A stretch of DNA of 63,628 bases, filler included, from Octopus bimaculoides (taxonomy: Eukaryota), in assembly GCF_001194135.2 (NCBI RefSeq). It is 6 parts of 5 records of this genome, joined end to end, with 100 filler letters (N's around TTAATTAATTAA, not from the genome) between each part and the next. Parts side by side here need not be neighbours in the genome. Positions count along the whole stretch, not along the records: positions 1 to 12,108 come from NC_068981.1; 5 more parts are not named here. One strand, given 5' to 3'. The stretch's first letter is position 1, and every line of letters begins with the position of its first letter. The translations under genes and the position numbers were made by a program. The notes beneath the pieces are model-generated. The model saw nothing but the letters and a program-made list of their open reading frames with translations, was not told where the DNA came from and searched no databases. Positions 1 to 13,220 of the stretch are shown in pieces.

Positions 1-330
1 AAACGGGCTGATTACTACCTAGCTCAGATACCAGGAAACCCCAAAATGGCTGAAGTTCAAAAGATAGTGCTCATGGGAACTGCCCATATCCTACGTAAAA
101 TACTGTCTATGTGATCTCAAATTTTAAAACAAACACATAATTTTCTTATGGTTTCTTAAACATTCACTAGAACAAAACTGTACAAATCCAAATATATGGT
201 ACCCTAGGCATAACACCTACATGAACTTCTAACTTGTTGTCTCTTGAGGTCTCTGGGTGAGACTTGGATCCAACTTGTACAAATGCAAAACAAAAGTCAA
301 ACATTAAATAATAATAATAATAATAATAAT
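1..330 (+). mobile_element. 3' end of an R4/Dong-like RLE non-LTR retrotransposon with 3' UTR and (AAT)n tail
   Basis: 1-114 translates KRADYYLAQIPGNPKMAEVQKIVLMGTAHILRKILSM*, the typical R4/Dong C-terminus; (AAT)n tail at ~306-330. Confidence 0.85.
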
Positions 331-589
331 GACGATGGTGATGATGATTTCATTTATTTGCCACAAGGACGAAGGATGAGGGGGACAATACAGAGACATA
401 TAAAGTGTGGGGGTTTACATATAACAATGAAATGATAAAAAAATAAACAGTAATAATAACACCATGGATATTGAGCTGTAAAACAAATAAAAGTCAAGTA
501 GTGAGCTGTAAAAAATAAAAATGATAATAAAAAACACTAGCCATGAACAAGGTAGCACCAATAATCATAAAATATATAAAACATTCCAT

Positions 590-2462
590 AAATTAATGGC
601 AGACAATGCTACAACCCCAGACAAAAGAGGGACTCATAAAACCAAAGCCATCCCCATTAGAAGAGGAATATTCCAGGGAGACACGTTCTCTCCACTCCTT
701 CTCTACTTGGTACTGACACCTTTATCTGACATGCTAAACAGAACTGGATGTGCATACAACTGTTACGGCAAAACAATAAGCCATCTCTTGTATATGGATG
801 ATCTAAAACAACGCTATAAATGATAAACAGCTGGAAACATTATTACAGAAAGTACATGGATTTACCAAAGAAATAAACATGAAATTTGACTTAGAAAAAT
901 GTGCCAAAGCAATATTGAAAAGAGGAAAACTAGTTAAGAGTAGCAACATCACACTAGATAAAGCAAATGAAATAAGAAAATTAGACCAAAGCCAGACATA
1001 CAAATATTTAGGGATCAATGAACTAGATACGATACAACACACACACAAATGAAAGAGAAGACAAAAAAGGAATACTATAGACGAGTTAGATTAAAACTGA
1101 AAACAGAGCTCAATGCAAAAATAAAACAAGATAATAGGTATCAACACTCTTGCCGTTTCAGTTATAAGTTACAGATACAATATTCTTAACTGGACTCTAA
1201 ATGAATTAATATAATAAACAGGAAAACAAGAAAAATAATGACAGGATTTAGGATGTACCACACAAAATCTGACATAGAAAGACTATATATACAACGTATA
1301 GAAGGTGGTAGAGGCCTTATGCAGCTAGAAAACTATTACAAAATAACCGCCATAGGACTACAGAAATACCTACTTCAGAAGCAAGGAAAACTAATACAGA
1401 TATCCACAAAATACGAAGAAAACAAAAAACTATTTTCAGTTTTTAAGGAAGTTGATAAATGCAAAAAAGAAGTCATAGTACCTAACAACTATGAAGAAAA
1501 AGAAGAAACAACAAAAGCTATAAAAGAACTGAAATCCAAACTAAAACTGGAACAGCAACGGATCATGATAAAATGATGGCAAGAAAAGCCCATACATGGC
1601 AAAAACTGGGTTAAGCTAAACAGAAAATACATAGACAAAGCAAAATCCCAACAATAACTGAGAAGCACAGGACTCTAAGCAGAGACTGAAGGACTTTTAA
1701 TTGCAGCACAAGATCAAAGCCTTTCCACCAGAAATACCAAAAAACACGCAATGAAAAGAAATACAAGTAACTGCAGAATATGTAGTGATGGAGAAGAAAC
1801 AATAAATCATATTATCTTTGGCTGCCAAGTCCTTGCTAAGAAGGAATATATTCACAGACACGACAGAGTTGGGACCTATATACACTGGATGCTATGCCAA
1901 CTCTATGGAATCACAACAGAAAAAAGTTGGTATAGGCAGAAAAGGTTACAGAAAATGAGAAAGCAACCATACTCTGGGATATGCCAAAACACACAGATAG
2001 GGAAATTAAGGCCAATAGGCCAGATGTAGTTGTCAGAGATCACCAAGAAAAACAAAAACTTCCTAAACGTTGTATCAATATGTTGTTACATGACAGCTTT
2101 AAGACACTATTATTTATTGTTGTTGTTACATGACAATGTTTCTCTAACGGAGAAACTTTCAAAATACAAAGATCTGGAAACAGAGGTAACTCGAAGGTGG
2201 AGCCTAAAAACAGAAACAATTCCTATCATAGTAGGTGCATTAGGTATGATAAAAATCATTCAGACAGATACATAACAAAAACACCAGGGCTTACAAGTAT
2301 ATATAACATACAGAAAATAGCACTACTAGGCACCGCACATATCCTACGTAAAACACTTTCAATACAGAAAGAGCACTACAACAAACCACAGCACATACCC
2401 AAGACACACAGAGCTGCGCTCGGTAGTGCAGTGGAAGCGCCTAATGGAAATAAGACTACTGA

Positions 2463-2536
<74 letters not shown>
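590..2536 (+). mobile_element. Degenerate 5'-truncated R4/Dong-like LINE (RT, CCHC knuckle, restriction-like endonuclease), (AAT)n tail
   Basis: RGIFQGDTFSPLL and ISHLLYMDDLK (RT); CRICSDGEETINHIIFGC (CCHC); ANRPDVVV, EKLSKYKDL, IPIIVGALG (RLE); IQKIALLGTAHILRKTLSI; frameshifts and stops; (AAT)n 2466-2536. Confidence 0.92.
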
Positions 2537-2538
<2 letters not shown>

Positions 2539-2829
2539 TCTTTCAATAGTATTTCAAGTGGCTTAAAACCCCGCTGATAATCTTAGAGACAAGAAAGATT
2601 ATCAGAAGGGTTTTAAACTAGACTATTAAAAGCTTGTAGATACTTAAGGATACAAGTAGTAACTCGCTACCCGCATAAATTCTATAAGGAATAAGAACAA
2701 ACCTGAGTCAAATCACTATCACCATCATCATCATCATCATCATCATCATCAGAAATAACAATAATGATAATAATAATAATAATAATAATAATTATTATTA
2801 TTATTTCTCTTATTAGCCACAAAGGCCCA

Positions 2830-3400
2830 AGACATGGAGGACAGAGTGAGGGAGGGGAGTAAGTTGTGAAAGATATGCTGAGAGATAAAAGGGTTGATTA
2901 TGAAAGCGAGAAAAAGTGTGTATGAGGGCGTAATTGTGCTGACAATGTTATATAGTGCAGAGACGTGGGGGCTGAGAGAGGCGGAAAGGATTCGACTGGA
3001 TGTGTTTGAGATGAGATGTCTGAGGGCTATGGTTGGTGTGATACAGATGGACAGGATGAGGAGTGCGAAGGCGAGCAGGAATGAGAGAAAAACTAACAAC
3101 CAAAACGGACAAACGAATGTTGAGATGGTTTGGCCACAGGGTGAGGATGAATGAGGAGCGAATGGTAAAGAGGGTGATGAAGGCAGAATTGGTAGGCAGC
3201 AGAACCAGAAGCAGACCTCAGTTTGTGTGGATGGATGGAGTGAAGAAAACTTTGGTGGTTAGAGGTGTTGGAGTGAGAGAGACAAGAGAGTTTATAAATG
3301 ATAGGAAAACTTGGAGAGTGTTTGTGGACGGATGACGGATGTTGCTCAAAGGGGTATGGAACCAGCATGATACGGCGGAGGTAAACCAGCATATGCTGTT
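2830..3400 (+). mobile_element. RTE-clade LINE 3' fragment
   Basis: MLYSAETW..FEMRCLRAM..MDR and LRWFGHRVRMNEERMVKRV..GSRTRSRPQFVWMDGVKK, the post-RT signature of RTE elements. Confidence 0.85.
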
Positions 3401-3469
3401 GGGCCCCACTGCTGATATTGGGGGTTGCGTTCTATGCCTTGACACGAGCATAGAACGGGGATAGCCTCT

Positions 3470-3932
3470 TTGAACTAGGAAATGAATGGAATGCCTGGTG
3501 TATGTTTTGTTGTGGCTACCGCCTCCTAAAATAATAGGGAAAGGCTTGGGTATATATATAAAAAAAATCAATGTCTTCAGAAATGAAAACTCTCTTTCTA
3601 AAAAGAAGGTAAACGATGCAGTAAGTGGAGAATCCGCAACCAAGAAAAAATACAAAGATGTTTATAAGCGCATACTAAGCATTGTCAGAGGTTACGATCA
3701 AAATCAAAAACATTATTTGCGTGCAATTTCAATGAACTTACATGATTTTTAACTTTTTAGTTTTTTAGCTTAACTTTTTAAACACAGTGTATGACCTTCA
3801 TTATTTTTATTTTTATTTTCTATCCTTCTCTTCTTATGGTTTACTACAAAATGTCCTTGCGGCGAAATATTCGTACGGTGAATTGTCTTACGGCGAAAGT
3901 CCTACGGTCCTACGGCGAATTGTCCTAGATTC
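3470..3932 (+). mobile_element. MULE-like DNA transposon 3' end
   Basis: KKKYKDVYKRILSIVRGYDQNQKHYLRAISMNL resembles MULE transposase C-termini; subterminal TACGGCGAA repeats at 3860-3925. Confidence 0.65.
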
Positions 3933-3974
3933 GGTAGGTATGGCCTGTATTCAAACATTTCAGATGGGTCTACC

Positions 3975-4066
<92 letters not shown>

Positions 4067-4079
4067 CAACAATAATAAT

Positions 4080-5220
4080 AGCTAATGCTATTAAGGGAAG
4101 AAAGTGGATGACAGAATTGGAGGTGGAAGAGATTACAAGAGAATTAAGAAAGAAAGACCAGGCAGTGGGAAAGACAAACAGCAACATAAGAGATACAGAT
4201 CAAACCAAAGAAGAACCTAAAAGAAAAAATAGTAATAGCACTACCAATAAGGAAAGGACAACTGACACCAGCGATTTAAGTGATTAAAGTGAGGAAGATC
4301 AGAAAATTTTAGATGAGTTGCAGGAAGTAATGAGTAAAGAAGTAAGAAAAAAATTGCCAGCATTAAAAGGTATCAACAGAAGGAAGTTACAAGAAATGAC
4401 TAGGAAAGCAGATTCTGTTATCAGTAGGACAGATACTAAAAATATAGAAGACACTAACTTACTGATCTATGCAAGAGGGGGAGTAATTACCAGAAAATCA
4501 GATATCTCACAGGGAAAGATTAAAAAAGAGCAAATGTGGAAAAAGGAGATTACAAAATAAAGTGAAGTCTTTAAGACAAGATCTGAGTAGAATAGAAGCC
4601 TAGAAACTGAACAAGTTAGGAAACACAAGATGCAAATCTTCCCTCGAGAAAAGATACTTAGTCAAAGAGAAAGGATTTAAGACAGTCATAGAAGAGTTGA
4701 AACAGTGTATCATAGCAGTAGCAGGAAAGCTTTCCAGATATCAGAAAAGAATAAATCAGTATCAACAGAATAGATTATTTGGGACAGATCAGAGGAGATT
4801 CTATAACCAAATAAATAGGGGAGAAGAAAGTACAGAAGATGAGATACTTAATGCAAAAGAAGCTAGAAAGTTCTGGAGTAATATTTGGGATAAGCCAGTC
4901 AATCATAATGGAGATGCAGTATGGTTAACGAAAGTGAGGGTAGAAGTAGTGAGTGAGAAGCAGCCAGACCTAAGACTAACTAGTGCATTAATGAGTAAAG
5001 TGTTAGGAAAAATGCCGAATTGGAAGGGCCCTAGACCAGATTTAGCTCAAGGGTACTGGCTAAAGAAATTTAGTAGTTTACAAGGGAGGCTGAGGGAACA
5101 AATTCAGGATTGCCTGAATGGAGGAATAATACAAGATTGGATGACTAGAGGGAGAACAATATTCCTGATAAAAGATAAAAGCAAAGATAAAACAGCTAGC
5201 AATTATAGACCAATCACTTA
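4080..5220 (+). mobile_element. R4/Dong-like LINE, N-terminal part of the ORF, truncated at the start of RT
   Basis: KLSRYQKRINQYQQNRLF..QRRFY, FWSNIWDKPVNHN, MPNWKGP.PDLAQGYWLKKF, DWMTRGRT, SNYRPIT; begins right after (AAC)n(AAT)n. Confidence 0.9.
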
Positions 5221-5709
5221 CACCCTGACCGACACTGTTCTCGACTAAGGGTCGCGTTCAACATGCACCGCGCGCTTTGCACCATATAATGAACTACCTC
5301 TCGGCGACAGACGGACCCTTTCTCCATCGAGTGAGCAAGAGAACTATGGAAGTAGTGGTTTTCCATCGTTGCAAATGCGAGCGACACTCCCATGCCAAAC
5401 TGGCCGTCCGACGACGCAGGTACGCGACGATGACGACGACGATGAACCGCGAGGAGCGGAACGCCGATAACCGAGCGCGCGTCACGCCACCAGTGACGGC
5501 GGCCGTCGCGGGGCAACATGAATGCTACCGCCTACCGTGTGCCCTCACAAAACCGGACTAGAGTTAAGCTCAACCGCGTCTTCTTTCCCCGCCGATTCGT
5601 CCAAACCAGTTCCCTCGGTTGTGGTTTCGCTACACAATAGATAGGGACAGTGGGAATCTCGTTAGTCCGTTCATGTACGTCATTAATTAGATGACAAGGC
5701 ATTTGGCTA
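5219..5709 (-). rRNA. Dispersed 28S rRNA fragment (pseudogene) starting at the R2 insertion site
   Basis: Plus strand matches the reverse complement of conserved LSU sequence (GACTAGAGTTAAGCTCAAC..TCTTCTTTCCCCGC..GATAGGGACAGTGGGAATCTCGTT..AATTAGATGAC.AGGCATTTGGCTA) plus a GC-rich expansion segment. Confidence 0.93.
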
Positions 5710-6110
5710 TTTTGCTTTATATACTAGAATCAGTAATACAAACTTCCTTATTATTTAACGTGGTCGGTTCCACTATGTCCCGTCAGCAGCACACGCACAT
5801 GATCGGAGAAAGATCTGCTGTATAACCTGGAAAGAGGATAATATAATGACCGAGAAGATAACGTGGAACACTGGAATGAAAGATTGTTGGGGAAAAACAT
5901 ACTATCAGTCTATCAACATCTAAAACAGAAACAAGAGGATGCAGGAAAATTTTCGCCTTGTCCAACTTCGAAGATGCTCCTAAGTGTCTTCAGTGTACCA
6001 GTTTCTGTTCCAGTGAGGGGAAAAGGTCGGTACGTGGAGTTTATTGAAGCAATATATGTGGTGGTTTGTCATCTGTGTGTGAATAGGTTGTTCTAATTTG
6101 ATTTTGTTTT
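5710..6110 (-). mobile_element. Putative R2 retrotransposon 3' end (5'-truncated)
   Basis: Minus strand ...ATAAAGCAAAA|TAGCCAAATGCC: non-rDNA sequence with a short A tail replaces the upstream 28S exactly at the AAGG/TAGC R2 site; weak C-terminal peptide TETGTLKTLRSIFEVG. Confidence 0.75.
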
Positions 6111-6117
6111 TGTATAT

Positions 6118-6153
<36 letters not shown>

Positions 6154-6155
<2 letters not shown>

Positions 6156-6325
6156 CAACACCTCGTCCGTCTTTACGTTCAAATTCCGCCGAGGTCGACT
6201 CTGCTCTTCATCCTTTCGGAGGTCAATGAAATAAATACTAGTCAAGTACTGGGGTCAGTGAAATTGACTTGCACCCTCTTCCAATATTTCAGGCCTTGTG
6301 CCTATAGTAGAAAGGATTATTACTA
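6154..6325 (+). mobile_element. SINE family A, 5'-truncated copy
   Basis: GTTCAAATTCCGCCGAGGTCGAC...GGCCTTGTGCCTATAGTAGAAAGGATTATT, shared with many copies in the window. Confidence 0.85.
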
Positions 6326-7276
6326 TAATTATCGTTATTGTTGTAGTACGAAAGTCTTCAAGATAGATCCGCGAAATACTGAATTTCCCCACGACATTTT
6401 GATGAAAGAAAAGATTCTTGATTCATTTTCTAAGCAAGCAATTTGGAAATATTAGGATGTCTACCCTATTTCCTGGGTGAGGGGAAAAGTTTGTTTTTAG
6501 ATACATTATTTTAAAAAATTGCTAAGTACTAGTAATTTAATATGACTTCTTCTGAAGTAGTGGGAAAAGTTAATAACAAGAAACGAGGTAGCACCAATTA
6601 CGCTCCCAAAGGATATTTAAAAAGTTAACATGAAAAAAGGAAGTGAACAGAAATGAACAAGCAGATACAGCAGAAATGAATACGTTAAGAAATGAAAAAA
6701 ATATCATATTTCCAATAATTTTAATAGGCAAAAGGAAAAACATAAGCCTTATTAGTGTTGTTAGAGAGAAATAATCGAAATAGGCTGCATCCCGGAGAAG
6801 TATTTGGAAGAAGTAAATTACAAAGGATAGCGCCTTGTTTCCCCAGAAATATTCATCATGATAAGTGTAAAGGATTTCATATGCACTCGTCGGTGTAGTA
6901 AGAAGAATTCTTGGCCGATTTGTGACATCATATGTACCCTACTAACTGGGCAACGGTGTATTTAAGTGTGTAATTAATTTTTTAAATGGAGGGAGAAGTG
7001 AGGTGACGAACCTAGTTGATGCAACACTCTCACCTAGGAAAGTGTCTGCTATACATCTAGTAATAGTAACCACTTGAGGACCAACTAACTTGGGTACCTA
7101 ATAAAAAAATGTAGAAAGTGGCTGACAAGAGTATGCTTCTAAAACTCCCGTTTCTAGAATACCACGCAACTCTGAGGACAAAACGGAAAAAAAATCGCCT
7201 CTTTCTCTTACCAGGAGCCGACAACTATGAAACTAGTCAATCTTCTCTCAACAATTGCAGAAGACAAAAAACGGAA

Positions 7277-7371
<95 letters not shown>

Positions 7372-7829
7372 GCACGCACGCACACATGCACACAAACACA
7401 AATTGTGTAAGAGGCATGGTGAAGTGAGTATTTTTCCGTCGAAAGTGAAGGATTTTCCTGTCGAAATATATGGCAGCTAATTAAAAAAAAATGTATAAAT
7501 CAAACTCACCTTCAAAAGAAAATGTCAGCTGTTTATCGTATAACATACACGTGTAGTTTGGAATATGATGAAGAAACGTGATCAATAATATAATGCTAAT
7601 TATAGCACATAAAAGGGAGTGAGAAAAGTCAGGTGTTTATTTACGGCTTAGTTTCCGATATGCGTGTCTGTGTATTGTGTATGTAAAGTGCTATTTTGCA
7701 TAAACGAAATAAACAGGTTTTATATCATTGAATATACGAGCACTCATTCTCATATGCACGTAAACACACACTACGACCGCCATCTACAGAGACAATAACA
7801 GTATCGGCTACAAGTGAAACTTTTAGAAA

Positions 7830-8520
7830 GATCCTATTCTGTTGGCATTTGCGGGAGACATCTACCAAAACGTCGGTTAGCAAGTCTTGGCACGTAAGAA
7901 TATGTAAAGCTCGCAGGACAGACCATCCAAAACAGGTGATTTACTCCTCATACAACCACTTCTCCGAAAATATCTTAGTTGCTGCGATCAGCTTAGCACT
8001 TCACGTCTTTTGCCAAGTGTCGCAGTAAATCGTAGGCTGGAGCTAAATTCAACTATCATCTCTGCTCTACCTCTCGCTCCAATCAGTTGAGTAAGTGCCG
8101 TTGGAAAATCGAGCACAGCTGCTTGGAACCGAATAGCATGCACCCATCCCGGTCTGTCATACATCGAATTGTGGCATTGTTACCACGTTGAGCTCCTAAC
8201 ACTTGAAATTATGGAATAGCTTTGCTTCTTTATGTTTTAGAGTACACACCTTGATTCTGAAAAAATTCGATCGCTCTTCTACGGTCGGACATAAGTGTCC
8301 ACTAGTCTAAAGCATAGCCCTCACTTTTGGTCACTTCTACCACTACCGGTTTATTGTCCGGATCCGGGATAATTGTCCGTACATCGAGATGTAAACCTTT
8401 CTAATGCTGGATAACCACATTAAGAGTCTATCGTGTATTCACCGAAAATGAGTGTCAGTCTGCGTGCTGGAAGTATTGGTTTTATTGATGTGCCCTAGCT
8501 ATCTGTAGCAACATGAGGCC
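7830..8520 (-). mobile_element. Degenerate Tx1/L1-like LINE ORF2 fragment (EN-RT linker)
   Basis: Minus frame QRGNNATIRCMTDRDGCMLFGSKQLCSIFQRHL with interspersed stops. Confidence 0.55.
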
Positions 8521-9289
8521 ATTAAAAAGCATCCTTACATCCAAGCCTGTCCCAAGCCAATAATACATATATTGTACTTGGTGTATAACCATCATGTCGG
8601 AACAAAGACAGAAGTCACCTTGTTCTTGGACAAGGAGAGTCAATTCGGTCTTGTCAGTAACGTGCGTGTGTGTGTGTGTGTGTATGTGCGCGCGTTCCTT
8701 GAAAGGCCGCTCCAAAATGTTTTGCTCGCTCTAATTCGGAACGTTCTGACATCATACTGGAATTATTTTCAGCGACTTATATAGTTTGATGGGATTTTCA
8801 GTAGGAGTCTTTTCGATGGAGATTTTGAGACGAACTTTGTATTTGTGGTTCTATGCACTCAAATTCATTGTACTTTCTACTTACAATACATCTCATGAAA
8901 AATTATTCTTGCGTGTTTGACCGTTCGTGTTCGTGCTGTTAGTGTCGCTGCTACTGCTACTGCTGTTGTTTCTTTTGATGTTTTTTGCAGTAATTGTGTT
9001 TGCGTGTTTCCTTGATTTTATTACTTGTGGATTCAGGTTTGGATATTCTTGCCGTGGTGGTGGTAGTGGTGGCAGCGACGGTGGTAGTGTGGTGGCGGCA
9101 GCGGTGGTGGTGTGGTGGTGGCGGTGGTAGCGGTGGTTTAGTGGCGGCGGCGGTGGTAGTGGGTGGCTACCCACTGAGTTTTCTGCCTCGTTGAATTTTT
9201 ATATATTTGCGGTTAGGACAGCCTTTTGTTTTCTATTTTTTTCTCTTCTCACTTAAGGCACAGGAGGAAAAGGACATATTCGAAAGTTC

Positions 9290-9900
9290 AGAAACTTCGC
9301 CGATCCCTAAATCTCACCGAGAATAAATCCCAACTTCTTAACGAGTACTTTAGACGAAGTCTTCAAGTCCGTGTCCACTTGACTTACGGGCACAATAGTA
9401 TCTAATCTGTCCGTCTTGTTTACATTCTTTCTTTGTAACGTTGCCACATTTTGACTTACACGACTGGGAAAGCTCTCAATCAGCTGCCAGATAAATATTG
9501 ACAAAGTTGGGAACCAATAAGTCTGGCCTCGATAGCAAGATTTGTTGAATAGAATTGATAATAGAATTGATAATAGAATTTGTTGAGTAGATCTTCCAAT
9601 TCAGAAGACTTGCTATTAACGCTGCCGCCCACATAATTTGTATTGTAAGCAGTCGGTTTCTCGCATTATTCTGCATTTGCATCAAAAGGAAGAGCTGTAG
9701 GAGGTCTATGATCACATATTCGATCCTTTCTTTAAATAGCTCACTGAAATGTTGTCCGAAAACCTTGTACTACCGGATCGGATACTTTTTAGCCACTCCC
9801 GGTCCAACAGAAAATGTACAACAGTTTATATCTTCTTTCGAATTTCAGAGCATATTCATTAGTACTGACATTTCAACTTACATGTATTTGAATAACAAAT
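9290..9900 (-). mobile_element. Degenerate Tx1/L1-like LINE fragment (linker and start of RT)
   Basis: YKVFGQHFSELF, SKSSELEDLLNKFY (GKSPGLDGLPYEFY-like), NVATLQRKNVNKTDRLD..DTDLKTSSKVLVKKL. Confidence 0.65.
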
Positions 9901-10445
9901 CTAATTATGTTTTATGGAAAGCTCTTCTAAGAACCAAGATTTGGTGAAACTTTAAAGGCTTCCACATCCCAAAAGAAATCTTGTGAACCTTCTAGTTTTG
10001 TCTTCAACAGAAGTGTTTTATTAATTCTCTTTTGAGGAAATATATTTCTCTCACCAATTCCAACACTATTTTATTTTCTGTTTTCTTATTTTTTAATGTG
10101 TTTCACCAACTCGTTCTTTTTAGCAATTTGAGTAGTCTTTATGATGTTTTTAATTAAAACATATGGTTTCATGTTTTCCGACATCCTGCCTTCTGTTAGT
10201 AATATTTCGAAAATATTCACGTAGACGATCACCCAGCGAGTGGCGATTCTCAATAATGTTGAGAGGAAGTTTGGTGTCATGAATAAACATAATTACAGAA
10301 AAGCAAGAAGCCCAATGCTTTGGGTGCAGGCCTTCTTCCCCCAAAAAAGAAACAAACAAACAAAGAGAGATAGAGAAAGGGAGAGAAGGAAAGAGAGAAA
10401 GAGAGAGGGAAAGAGAGATGGAGAGAGAAAGAGAAGGAGAGAAGC

Positions 10446-10494
<49 letters not shown>

Positions 10495-13220
10495 AAGAGA
10501 ATGCCATGCGTTTTAACTAAAATATATTTAAACACTCATGTTGACAATAAATGTTCTGTTTTGGCTATCTGTTTCTGATGCTGACCCATACCGGTTTTTT
10601 CAAGTTCTGGATTTTACCTTGATACTATAGTATTAGACTCCTGAGACTATACAAGGGAGAAAGAAGTGCAAAAGAATTGTTCGGGATTGTAAAGTTAAAT
10701 CATCTAAGGAAACATTTGATTAGTCCAGGTCGAATGAAAGTGGGAAGCAAGGTGCTTCAGACAAAGAGATGATTGCAGATTGTTAGCAAATTTTCCAATG
10801 TCATTATTTTGATTTCCCCACGTACTTGTTAATAGTTCTGAGATCTTAGTAGTTAGAGCTATTGTACTTCGCCGAGGAAGTCTACAAATAAGACCAAATA
10901 AATATGGCAGTCAGATTCCAGACTCCCACGCTTCTGTTTATCTTTATTTAATTTTAGCTTAATTAAAATTTTGGGATGTTCCTTCCATATCATTTTTGAG
11001 AGTGATTTTCATTAACACCAATGAATTTTCTTCTCATTGCAGTTATAATTGAAAAATTCTTTTCGGCTCAACACATCAAGTAAGGCAGCCAGCACTTAAC
11101 TATATATCCTTTATGCAGAAGGCAAGCTTTATGCAGAAGGTACAATATCTTTAAACAATAGACAAAACGTGGATATGACGGGTTGCGTGGTTACAGAATT
11201 TTCAAAGCGGCTGATACTTGCATGTTTGAGAACAGTGGAGAAAAAGAAAGGAAAGAGATAAAGAAGCAATTCTGTTTGGAATACCATGTTGTTTAGCCTA
11301 AAATCAACACTGAGGAGCAGATCTAAATAAAAAGCGCTCAAGTTTTGACATTCCATCTCTTTTGTTTATGCGTCTTCTCTAAAGTCACATTATCCAATCA
11401 GAGAATATGCAATCAGATTTAACATATGTTAATTCTGAAAAATTAAAATCCTGGGATCAAACGAACACATATAATCGAGAATGCTGGAATATTGGAGTAG
11501 CAGCGGAGAGAATTCAACTTTAAAAAGTAAAGTATTCATCATCATTATCTACTACTACTACTACTACTTCCTCATTTTTGACAAGTGCTCAGGATGAAAC
11601 TTTAGGCCCTTGAAGTCAGTTATGTAGCTTCAAGGTTACAAATAACACACACACACATGTGTATATATATGTATGTGTGTGTGTATATGTATACTTTATA
11701 TATATATAAATATTCTACACACACACACACACGTATATACATATATATCGAGCTGACCAGTCGCAAATTCCTTGTCTCTCCGTCCTTAGGGCATTTTCTA
11801 AGCGTTGCCCACTATTCTCGTCTTCTTGGTCCTAAGGCTACATTTTGCTCGACTGTTCGTCGTTGTCCACCATCCTAAATCACAGTCTGTGTCGTTTTGC
11901 TTTGTTTTGTTTGATCTCGGCCCTAATTAGCTCCAATGAATGTTTTTAGCGGGCGCCACCAATTGTGAAGCTCTCAGTCTTATCATTGAAGGTGTGAAAC
12001 TGAGTATTAGCAATTGGTTGATTACTGATGAGGAATTAGGGACCTTCTGTGTTTGTCTCCCGTCTGGTTTTACACTCTGTATACGTTGTGCCGTATGTTT
12101 ATTTACCTNNNNNNNNNNNNNNNNNNNNNNNNNNNNNNNNNNNNNNNNNNNNTTAATTAATTAANNNNNNNNNNNNNNNNNNNNNNNNNNNNNNNNNNNN
12201 NNNNNNNNAAAAATTAATAATTAAAAGCACAATAAATGAGTATAATATAAAACAAAGTAAATAAAGTGGATCTTCATCGATGAGTTCTTGAAACTTGGTT
12301 ATTTTCCCTAAAACTATATATATTATATATATTTTAATCTATAAAGCTCAATTTAATTTTAATTTTTTATAAATTGATTTTAATTGAGTTTTTACTTGTA
12401 ATTTTGGATTTTGTCCCTAATATTATTATATATATATATATATATGATTATCATTAAAAAAAAATAATAATAATATCAGTGCCCAGCATGCAATTAAAAG
12501 CCGTAGAGGTAAAACTTAATATATATTAAAGAGTTAAATAGGCGGTTGAGAGTCTTTTGACTTCTATTTCTTACATATTGGTACTTTTTCCAAGTATCCC
12601 ACGTTATGATTATATATTCGACGAGCTTCTTTCAGTTTCCGTCTACAAAACTCACAAAGTTATGGTCGGCCCGAGGCTATAGAAGAAAACACTAGCTCAG
12701 GGTGCCATGCAGTAGAACTGAACTTGGAATCGTGTGGCTGGGAAGCAAGCTTCTTACCACTCAACCACGCCTGCACACACACAAAAAACATTAAAATATT
12801 ATTAAGATAGTATAGTTTTCATGAAGCATTTTCTGATATATACATAAATGTTTAGCTATTTTTTCAGCCAAAACAGTACAAGTTCGAAACACATTACAGA
12901 GTAGAGAAGTCGGCAATCAACATCTTCTCCGTAGATTCTTGACAAGGTCCTAACCCTAGAATACTGAAATACTAGGTAAGAGTACTAACCATCAACCTGT
13001 ATTTTTGCGTATTTAAACATTTAGAATATTATTAATTATCGAGCTAATGCTGTCCTTTTCTCACCACTTTGTTATTTCTAATGTGATTATTTTTATGCTC
13101 ATTACATTGAACAAGTTGACATTTATATACGAGGTTCTTCTCTCTCAGTTTCGTCAATCTCGTAAATAACTACAATGTAAAACAACACATAGGAAGTTAA
13201 TTCAAATAATTATCGCTCAC

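What the first reader, a model, noticed from the sequence alone, without database searches (positions are those of the whole stretch)
5219..6110. Orphan R2/28S 3' junction outside the rDNA array
Seen: 28S homology stops exactly at TAGCCAAATGCC (5709) and is preceded on the minus strand by ~400 nt of non-rDNA ending GCAAAA. Known: this is the R2 cleavage site AAGG/TAGC, and R2 3' ends abut it with a short A run. Inferred: footprint of an R2 lineage in this genome's rDNA, moved as a read-through cDNA or DNA fragment. rDNA arrays are usually absent from drafts, so this may be the only assembled trace.
Basis: partly seen in the sequence, partly recalled or inferred. Interest (0 to 1): 0.8.

Follow-up and report, generated by a model that had tools for sequence, protein, structure and literature searches.

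The report
Decayed 28S fragment broken at R2 site
A dead, roughly 490-base piece of an octopus 28S ribosomal RNA gene starts exactly at the spot where R2 jumping genes insert. It sits among other transposon debris away from any other ribosomal DNA, so it is an ordinary molecular fossil and not a new kind of element.

Summary
Window 5220-5709 (minus strand) is a 28S rRNA fragment (Rfam LSU 90.9 bits, E 8e-22). Its homology begins to the base at TAGCCAAATGCC (5709), the downstream flank of published R2 insertions, and GCAAAA (5715-5710) precedes it. The fragment matches Octopus vulgaris/sinensis 28S through an octopus-specific variable stretch, so the genome is an octopod. It has about 10% substitutions, 16 of them in the invariant core, so it is an old pseudogene. 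No other rDNA lies in the 12 kb, and a Dong-like LINE broken inside its reverse transcriptase adjoins it.

The breakpoint geometry fits target-primed reverse transcription at the R2 nick. Nothing tested shows that 5710-6110 is R2:
- it has no ORF;
- it does not resemble the visible first 399 nt of the Octopus or Eledone R2 3' UTRs;
- it is AT-rich;
- it folds worse than shuffles (z +2.0), whereas five genuine R2 3' UTRs give -0.7 to -2.3.

The tools hold no octopus genome, so copy number and linkage to an RT-RLE ORF could not be tested. R2 is already described in four octopods (Genome Biol 2026), so this is not the only trace. Novelty and interest are low.

The parts
5220..5709 (-). 28S rRNA pseudogene fragment. 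It runs from the R2 insertion site (LSU model position 2280) to about model position 2620 and includes an octopus-type expansion segment.
   Evidence: Rfam RF02543 scores 90.9 bits, E 8e-22, and the match ends at 5220. Against the O. vulgaris flank there are 22 mismatches in 225 aligned nt plus 2 indels, with 16 transitions.
5698..5715 (-). The junction itself: GCAAAA | TAGCCAAATGCC.
   Evidence: Read directly from the sequence. The boundary coincides with the start of the downstream 28S flank in published R2 rows.
5710..6110 (-). Non-rDNA segment ending in GCAAAA. It is a candidate 5'-truncated 3' end of whatever was inserted at the R2 site (R2 or an RNA mobilised by R2). Its identity is not established.
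   Evidence: Position only. Negative results: no ORF, no internal repeat, no match to the visible R2 3' UTR parts, no match to upstream 28S, MFE z +2.0.
6113..6154 (.). (TA)21 microsatellite that bounds the non-rDNA segment.
   Evidence: Tandem Repeats Finder.
6156..6290 (-). Short repeat-like segment that resembles, from my memory only, the abundant octopus tRNA-derived SINE tail (...GTCGACCTCGGCGGAATTTGAAC...).
   Evidence: Read from the sequence. There is no tRNA gene and no Rfam hit. The SINE assignment is recalled and was not tested.
4081..5219 (+). 5' part of a Dong-like LINE with a restriction-like endonuclease (RLE). It begins right after (AAT)23 and is cut inside the RT at the NYRPIT motif, where the 28S fragment abuts. 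The exact breakpoint is ambiguous within about 5211-5226 because of imperfect similarity between the two sequences.
   Evidence: Translation. No continuation of the RT appears anywhere downstream (tblastn). (AAT)n lies at 4011-4080.

Best explanation
Shown: window 5220-5709 (minus strand) is a non-functional, mutated fragment of an octopod 28S rRNA gene. Its 5' end coincides exactly with the R2 retrotransposon target site.

Inferred: on the plus strand the 28S antisense strand ends ...GGCATTTGGCTA and is continued by TTTTGC.... That is the product expected when the R2 endonuclease nicks the 28S bottom strand and the freed 3' OH primes reverse transcription of an RNA ending ...GCAAAA. The feature is therefore most likely the 3' junction of an insertion into the R2 site. 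The inserted sequence was a 5'-truncated R2 copy or another RNA copied by the R2 machinery.

Also inferred: an approximately 0.9-kb piece spanning that junction later came to lie next to a broken Dong-like LINE in AT-rich, transposon-rich DNA. The route could have been a cDNA of an R2/28S co-transcript primed at a break in the LINE, or capture or recombination of an rDNA DNA fragment. The piece has since decayed by about 10%. It does nothing now.
For: - The 28S identity and the exact boundary are established.
- Published R2 flanks give the same boundary in Octopus, Eledone, Sepia, bivalves and fish.
- Decay shows it is a pseudogene: 22 substitutions in 225 nt, 16 of them in the 187-nt core that is nearly identical in all five mollusc reference flanks read (two deviate only inside it, a 32-nt deletion in Eledone and 5 substitutions in Sepia).
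- The octopod origin follows from the variable-region match, which extends to flank position 239 only for O. vulgaris and O. sinensis.
- No other rDNA lies in the 12 kb, and no upstream 28S is present.
- The neighbouring LINE has an intact 5' end at its (AAT)n target but lacks everything after NYRPIT. This implies a break or rearrangement at the 28S end.
- The plus-strand order (LINE sense, then 28S antisense, then element antisense) fits priming of a cDNA from a plus-strand 3' OH at about 5219.
- A genuine R2 3' end found in a metagenome (L039, with a CCHC + KPDIV endonuclease ORF) also ends GCAAAA|TAGCC.
- Extra-rDNA, incomplete R2 copies are documented in Drosophila (PMC2718515).
Against: - No positive evidence ties 5710-6110 to R2. 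It has no coding remnant and no similarity to the visible 399 nt of three octopod R2 3' UTRs. The best local alignment, to Eledone, is reached by 28 to 347 of 1000 shuffles depending on scoring.
- Its composition (39% GC) resembles the surrounding genome more than the known octopod R2 UTRs, which are 48-62% GC.
- Its predicted folding is weaker than shuffles, while five genuine R2 3' UTRs all fold better than shuffles.
- A 4-A run is too short to be diagnostic, and several published R2 3' ends do not end in A.
- The relocation mechanism is pure inference: there is no target-site duplication, no poly(A), and the rest of the LINE is missing.
Confidence: 0.65

Rival explanations
1. Only the 28S piece comes from rDNA. 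A 28S end was produced by R2 endonuclease cleavage, or the breakpoint fell there by chance. The fragment was captured at a chromosomal break, and 5710-6110 is unrelated local or other-repeat DNA, not R2.
For: The 401 nt look like background: GC 0.39 against 0.35 for 6300-7270, CpG o/e 0.75 against 0.72. They have no structure signal (z +2.0) and no similarity to known octopod R2 UTR parts.
Against: A captured broken end would usually be resected, so an exact boundary is less expected than for a TPRT junction. By chance the exact base is hit about once in 3,400. The neighbour ends in an A run, as many R2 junctions do (L039). The distal parts of the octopus R2 UTRs were not available for comparison.
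Confidence: 0.2
2. The locus is not truly orphan. It is a degenerate unit at the edge of, or inside, an rDNA array that has been invaded by other transposons.
For: Array borders commonly carry truncated, mutated rDNA units (general knowledge). Only 12 kb are visible.
Against: There is no other LSU, SSU or 5.8S match in 12 kb. The flanks are (AAT)n-targeted LINEs, microsatellites and AT-rich sequence. The 10% decay argues against ongoing homogenisation with the array.
Confidence: 0.1
3. The LINE/28S join at about 5219 is an assembly chimera.
For: Both partners are repeats, and the breakpoint shows a short imperfect similarity between them (CCAATCA..CT..CACC, read).
Against: The 28S copy is a diverged pseudogene. 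A collapse of rDNA reads would give the array consensus sequence instead. The similarity is far shorter than assembly k-mers.
Confidence: 0.05

Closest known systems
R2 non-LTR retrotransposons of octopods (R2-1_OVu, R2-1_OSi, R2-1_ORu, R2-1_ECi; Genome Biol 2026, PMC13188248)
   Same: The downstream 28S flank starts at TAGCCAAATGCC in the same way. The window's 28S fragment matches the O. vulgaris and O. sinensis flank through the octopus-specific variable region.
   Different: The window has no R2 ORF, no upstream 28S and no ribozyme. Its 401-nt neighbour is AT-rich and shows no similarity to the first 399 nt of those elements' GC-rich 3' UTRs. Their last parts could not be read.
Extra-rDNA, incomplete R2/R1 copies and displaced rDNA-insertion fragments in Drosophila (Stage and Eickbush 2009, PMC2718515)
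   Same: These are incomplete copies of rDNA-specific elements, or segments displaced by recombination, that lie outside the rDNA locus in repeat-rich DNA.
   Different: Those copies were 1-2% diverged and recognisably R2. This one is about 10% decayed in its 28S part, and the R2 identity of its element part is unproven.
Non-autonomous R2 derivatives (SIDEs) and other RNAs copied by the R2 machinery
   Same: They would leave the same 3' junction at TAGCC without any R2 coding sequence (my knowledge of the R2 literature; not tested here).
   Different: SIDEs carry an R2-like structured 3' end and a 5' ribozyme joined to upstream 28S. Neither is seen here.
Dong/R4-type RLE LINEs that target (TAA)n (a Dong element is reported in O. 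bimaculoides, PMC9115989)
   Same: The neighbouring plus-strand elements have an RT, a CCHC finger followed by an RPDVVV motif, and (AAT)n at their ends.
   Different: They are context only. They do not target 28S, and their sequence is unrelated to 5710-6110.

Membership tests
Eukaryotic LSU (28S) rRNA gene, Rfam RF02543 | Matches the covariance model above the gathering score | tested here: met
   90.9 bits against a gathering score of 50, E 8.1e-22, over model positions 2280 to about 2620.
Eukaryotic LSU (28S) rRNA gene, Rfam RF02543 | Complete gene with an intact invariant core (a functional copy) | tested here: not met
   Only about 340 of 3401 model positions are present. There are 16 substitutions in the 187-nt core that is nearly identical in all five mollusc reference flanks read (Eledone and Sepia deviate only by an internal 32-nt deletion and 5 substitutions). 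It is a pseudogene fragment.
R2 retrotransposon (28S-specific, RLE-bearing non-LTR element) | 3' end abuts 28S exactly at ...TTAAGG | TAGCCAAATGCC... | tested here: met
   The boundary is at window 5709/5710. Published flanks give the same boundary.
R2 retrotransposon (28S-specific, RLE-bearing non-LTR element) | Single ORF with N-terminal zinc finger/Myb, RT, and C-terminal CCHC + restriction-like endonuclease | tested here: not met
   No such remnant appears in the minus-strand frames of 5701-12108, judged by reading them; the Pfam scan of these frames failed on stop codons. This is expected for a severely 5'-truncated copy, but the feature is absent.
R2 retrotransposon (28S-specific, RLE-bearing non-LTR element) | Sequence homology of the 3' UTR to an R2 family of the same or a related host | tested here: inconclusive
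   There is no similarity to the first 399 nt of the OVu, OSi and ECi UTRs or to the complete Sepia and Sepiola UTRs. The distal octopus UTR sequence is cut off in the held table.
R2 retrotransposon (28S-specific, RLE-bearing non-LTR element) | Structured 3' UTR RNA | tested here: not met
   MFE z is +2.0 for the 401 nt and +0.4 for the last 200 nt. Five genuine R2 3' UTRs give -0.7 to -2.3. About 10% decay could have blurred any structure.
R2 retrotransposon (28S-specific, RLE-bearing non-LTR element) | 5' junction with upstream 28S and an HDV-like ribozyme | tested here: not met
   The upstream 28S flank (254 nt) has no rDNA-like match in the piece, only a 15-nt chance hit at 4691-4677. There is no ribozyme family hit in 5100-6300 at E up to 10.
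R2 retrotransposon (28S-specific, RLE-bearing non-LTR element) | Multiple copies in the genome, the others linked to rDNA | not testable with these tools
   No octopus genome or reads are available. The protein database returned nothing even for the common LINE query.
Dong/R4-type RLE LINE (neighbouring elements only) | RT plus C-terminal CCHC and PD-(D/E)xK-type motif; insertion in (TAA)n | tested here: met
   RVT_1 E 1.6e-11. zf-RVT scores 24.5 bits, just under the cut-off of 27.5. The CCHC region aligns to a genuine R2 C-terminus, E 6e-4. The RPDVVV motif is read by eye. (AAT)n abuts all three copies. Clade assignment by phylogeny was not done.

The most novel reading that the evidence does not exclude
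The 401 nt at 5710-6110 may be the 3' end of an undescribed octopod element that used the R2 site. It could be a second, AT-rich and weakly structured R2 lineage, or a non-autonomous RNA parasitising the R2 machinery. Either would be distinct from the GC-rich R2-1_OVu/OSi family. The fragment may have reached its present place as a cDNA of an R2/28S co-transcript primed at a chromosomal break.
Probability: 0.2. Interest if true: 0.35.

Novelty: new member of a known kind. Interest (0 to 1): 0.15.

Why it matters
The finding matters only modestly.
- It is a datable fossil. It shows that something was inserted at the R2 site of 28S genes in the octopod lineage about 10% sequence divergence ago.
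- It shows that rDNA/insertion junction fragments get scattered into transposon-rich DNA in cephalopods, as they do in flies.
- Such fragments can mislead rDNA or R2 annotation pipelines that search with junction sequences.
- It opens no new question, because R2 elements of four octopods are already published.

Tried and rejected
- Exact-protein look-ups of two ORFs in the region found nothing on record.
- A six-frame translation of 5710-6110 searched against 5.8 billion proteins gave no hit.
- The O. sinensis R2 N-terminus (399 aa, taken from the paper's table) was searched to fetch full octopus R2 loci and gave no hit.
- A control search with the neighbouring LINE's N-terminal RT region found only 28 word candidates and no hit. 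I take this to mean the database lacks octopus and other eukaryotic transposon proteins, because from my own knowledge this motif region is common in animal proteomes. The two previous negatives therefore say nothing about copy number.
- A metagenome scan for GCRAAATAGCCAAATGCC returned 75 loci. Of these, 74 are chance matches and one (L039) is a real R2/28S junction from an unknown eukaryote. L039 shares nothing with the window beyond the hexamer.
- A local alignment to the Eledone R2 3' UTR looked suggestive (69 columns). It was reached by 28, 70 or 347 of 1000 dinucleotide shuffles under three scoring schemes, so I rejected it as evidence.
- cmscan's weak alignment of 5740-5790 to upstream 28S is no better than shuffles. 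I rejected both the idea of a 28S-derived motif and the idea of an internally deleted 28S.
- I looked for continuation of the broken LINE downstream of the insert, which would indicate simple insertion into a LINE. None was found.
- Two Pfam scans of raw frames failed because of stop codons.
- The preprint version of the R2 paper holds no supplementary text.

Full report
**The observation**

The plus strand reads ...gatgacaaggcatttggcta|ttttgctttatatac... at 5690-5724. On the minus strand this is ...GTATATAAAGCAAAA|TAGCCAAATGCCTTGTCATC..., with TAGCCAAATGCC at 5709-5698 and GCAAAA at 5715-5710.

A whole-piece Rfam scan finds three sub-threshold LSU_rRNA_eukarya pieces on the minus strand between 5220 and 5709, and no other rRNA in 1-12108. 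When only 5100-6300 is submitted, the pieces join into one match of 90.9 bits (gathering score 50, E 8.1e-22). Posterior probability is maximal from model position 2280 (UAGCCAAAUGCC) onward and low upstream of it. The 28S match ends at about window 5220, model position about 2620.

A random breakpoint would hit that exact base about once in 3,400 model positions.

**Organism and state of the 28S piece**

Supplementary Table S2 of a 2026 Genome Biology survey of R2 elements (PMC13188248) lists upstream and downstream 28S flanks for each element. It includes Octopus vulgaris, O. sinensis, O. rubescens and Eledone cirrhosa. In row after row the upstream flank ends ...CTCTTAAGG and the downstream flank starts TAGCCAAATGCC.

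- blastn of the O. vulgaris and O. sinensis downstream flanks gives positions 1-239 = window 5709-5485.
- The Sepia and mussel flanks align only through the conserved first 187 nt. The window therefore carries octopus-type variable sequence, and the genome is an octopod.
- The 254-nt O. sinensis upstream flank has no rDNA-like match in the window; its single hit is a 15-nt chance match at 4691-4677 with E 0.36. A gapped alignment shows identity collapsing exactly at AAGG|TAGC.
- Against O. vulgaris there are 22 mismatches in 225 aligned nt (90.2%) plus two indels. Sixteen mismatches are transitions and seven are CpG-type.
- Sixteen mismatches lie in the core, which is nearly identical in the five mollusc reference flanks read. 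The exceptions are an internal 32-nt deletion in Eledone and five substitutions in Sepia.

It is an old, dead copy and is not part of a homogenised array.

**The neighbour at 5710-6110**

This is the part of the interpretation that matters, and I could not verify it.

- The minus-strand frames contain no RT, CCHC or endonuclease remnant anywhere from 5701 to 12108, judged by reading the frames; the Pfam scan of them failed on stop codons.
- The segment has no second copy in the window.
- Only the first 399 nt of the Octopus and Eledone R2 3' UTRs are readable, because the table cells are cut. These, and the complete UTRs of Sepia and Sepiola, show no similarity to the window.
- One 69-column local alignment to the Eledone UTR is reached by 28, 70 or 347 of 1000 dinucleotide shuffles, depending on scoring. 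I do not count it as evidence.
- cmscan's weak pairing of 5740-5790 with upstream 28S is no better than shuffles.
- The segment is 39% GC, like the flanking genome at 35%. The readable octopod R2 UTR parts are 48-62% GC.
- Its predicted folding energy is worse than that of its shuffles (z +1.9 to +2.0). Five genuine R2 3' UTRs analysed the same way all fold better than their shuffles (z -0.7 to -2.3).
- About 10% decay may have eroded a structure, and the distal UTR sequence of the octopus elements is unseen. The R2 assignment is therefore neither confirmed nor refuted.

**Why database searches could not settle it**

- Exact look-ups of two local ORFs found nothing.
- A six-frame query of the 401 nt found nothing.
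- The O. sinensis R2 N-terminus found nothing.
- A control query with the neighbouring LINE's N-terminal RT region also found nothing, with only 28 word candidates. From my own knowledge this region is common in animal proteomes. I conclude the protein collection has essentially no octopus transposon content, so these negatives are uninformative.
Only L039 continues as 28S. L039 encodes a typical R2 C-terminus (C..C...H....C, then KPDIV). It shows that a genuine R2 can end GCAAAA|TAGCC, but it shares nothing else with the window.

**Context**

Three fragments of a LINE lie on the plus strand.

- Fragment 1 to about 120 is the 3' end of one copy.
- Fragment about 480-2461 contains an RT (RVT_1, E 1.6e-11). 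It also has a CCHC finger (zf-RVT, 24.5 bits, just under the cut-off) followed by ...ANRPDVVV..., the architecture of elements with a restriction-like endonuclease (RLE).
- Fragment 4081-5219 is a 5' part that stops in the RT motif NYRPIT.

Each abuts an (AAT)n run, at 307-330, 2462-2536 and 4011-4080. This is the behaviour of Dong-type elements, and a Dong element is reported in O. bimaculoides (PMC9115989).

The third fragment is joined directly to the 3' end of the 28S piece. Its missing RT and endonuclease part is nowhere downstream. The join is ambiguous within about 5211-5226, because CCAATCACTTACACCCTG resembles both partners imperfectly (read).

On the other side, the 401-nt segment runs into (TA)21 at 6113-6154 and a short repeat-like stretch at 6156-6290.

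**Mechanism**

Shown:
- a 28S fragment whose end is the R2 site;
- a non-rDNA continuation ending in GCAAAA;
- a broken LINE at the other end;
- no other rDNA nearby.

Inferred:
- The 28S antisense strand ending ...GGCTA-3' and continued by TTTTGC... is the product expected from R2 endonuclease nicking followed by target-primed reverse transcription. The junction was therefore most likely made in an rDNA unit by the R2 machinery, copying R2 RNA or another RNA.
- The 0.9-kb piece was later moved. The plus-strand order (LINE sense, 28S antisense, element antisense) fits a cDNA of an R2/28S co-transcript primed from a plus-strand 3' OH at a break in the LINE, with loss of the rest of the LINE. 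Capture of an rDNA DNA fragment, or recombination, fits equally well.
- There is no target-site duplication or poly(A) to discriminate between these routes.

**Rivals**

- The 28S piece alone may derive from rDNA, from an end cut by the R2 endonuclease or by chance, with the 401 nt being unrelated DNA (0.2).
- The locus may be a degenerate unit at an array border (0.1).
- The join may be an assembly chimera (0.05). This is unlikely because the 28S copy is a diverged pseudogene; collapsed rDNA reads would give the array consensus.

**Comparison and novelty**

- R2 elements of four octopods are already published.
- Incomplete R2 copies and displaced segments outside the rDNA locus are documented in Drosophila (PMC2718515).
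- This locus is a further example of a known kind. The claim that it may be the only assembled trace of R2 in such a genome does not hold.
- I do not file the 401 nt as R2. One defining feature is met (the insertion site). One is inconclusive (3' UTR homology). Three are not met in this copy (the ORF, a structured UTR, and a 5' junction with ribozyme).
- Interest is low. The remaining open possibility is an undescribed AT-rich R2 lineage or a non-autonomous passenger of R2 in octopods.

Noticed in passing
window 1-120, 480-2461, 4081-5219 (+), with (AAT)n at 307-330, 2462-2536, 2754-2792, 4011-4080: Three same-strand fragments of an RLE-type LINE (RT, CCHC finger, RPDVVV motif), each abutting an (AAT)n microsatellite. 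This looks like repeated Dong-type insertion into a TAA-repeat target. CpG o/e is only 0.12-0.34, so the copies are old and probably methylated.
   Followed up: partly
window 2894-3335 (+): A GC-rich (0.46-0.48), strongly G-skewed stretch with ORFs reading ...MLYSAETWGLREAE... and ...RMLRWFGHRVRMNEERMVKR.... From memory these resemble the C-terminal tail of an unrelated APE-type LINE. There was no Pfam hit.
   Followed up: partly
window 6156-6290 (-): A segment ...GGTCAATGAAATAAATACTAG.../...GTCGACCTCGGCGGAATTTGAACG... that resembles, from memory, the abundant octopus tRNA-derived SINE. There is no tRNA gene and no Rfam hit.
   Followed up: no
L039 (metagenome contig Ga0056124_1113454), reverse strand, about 310 nt upstream of its R2/28S junction: This genuine R2 3' end carries a second 17-nt copy of the 28S target sequence (AGGTAGCCAAATGCCTG) inside what would be its 3' UTR. 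It may be a 28S-derived motif in the UTR, or a short element stacked behind an R2 at the same site.
   Followed up: no
window 7279-7400, 9054-9167, 10364-10501, 11657-11707: Long (CA)n, (GTG)n-like, (AG)n-like and (TG/TA)n microsatellites. The last produces spurious sub-threshold miRNA-family hits in Rfam (mir-297, mir-466).
   Followed up: no
window 5211-5226: The LINE/28S breakpoint lies in a stretch (CCAATCACTTACACCCTG) that is imperfectly similar to both the LINE's NYRPIT codons and the 28S antisense sequence. This may be microhomology used in the joining. It was not tested against chance.
   Followed up: partly
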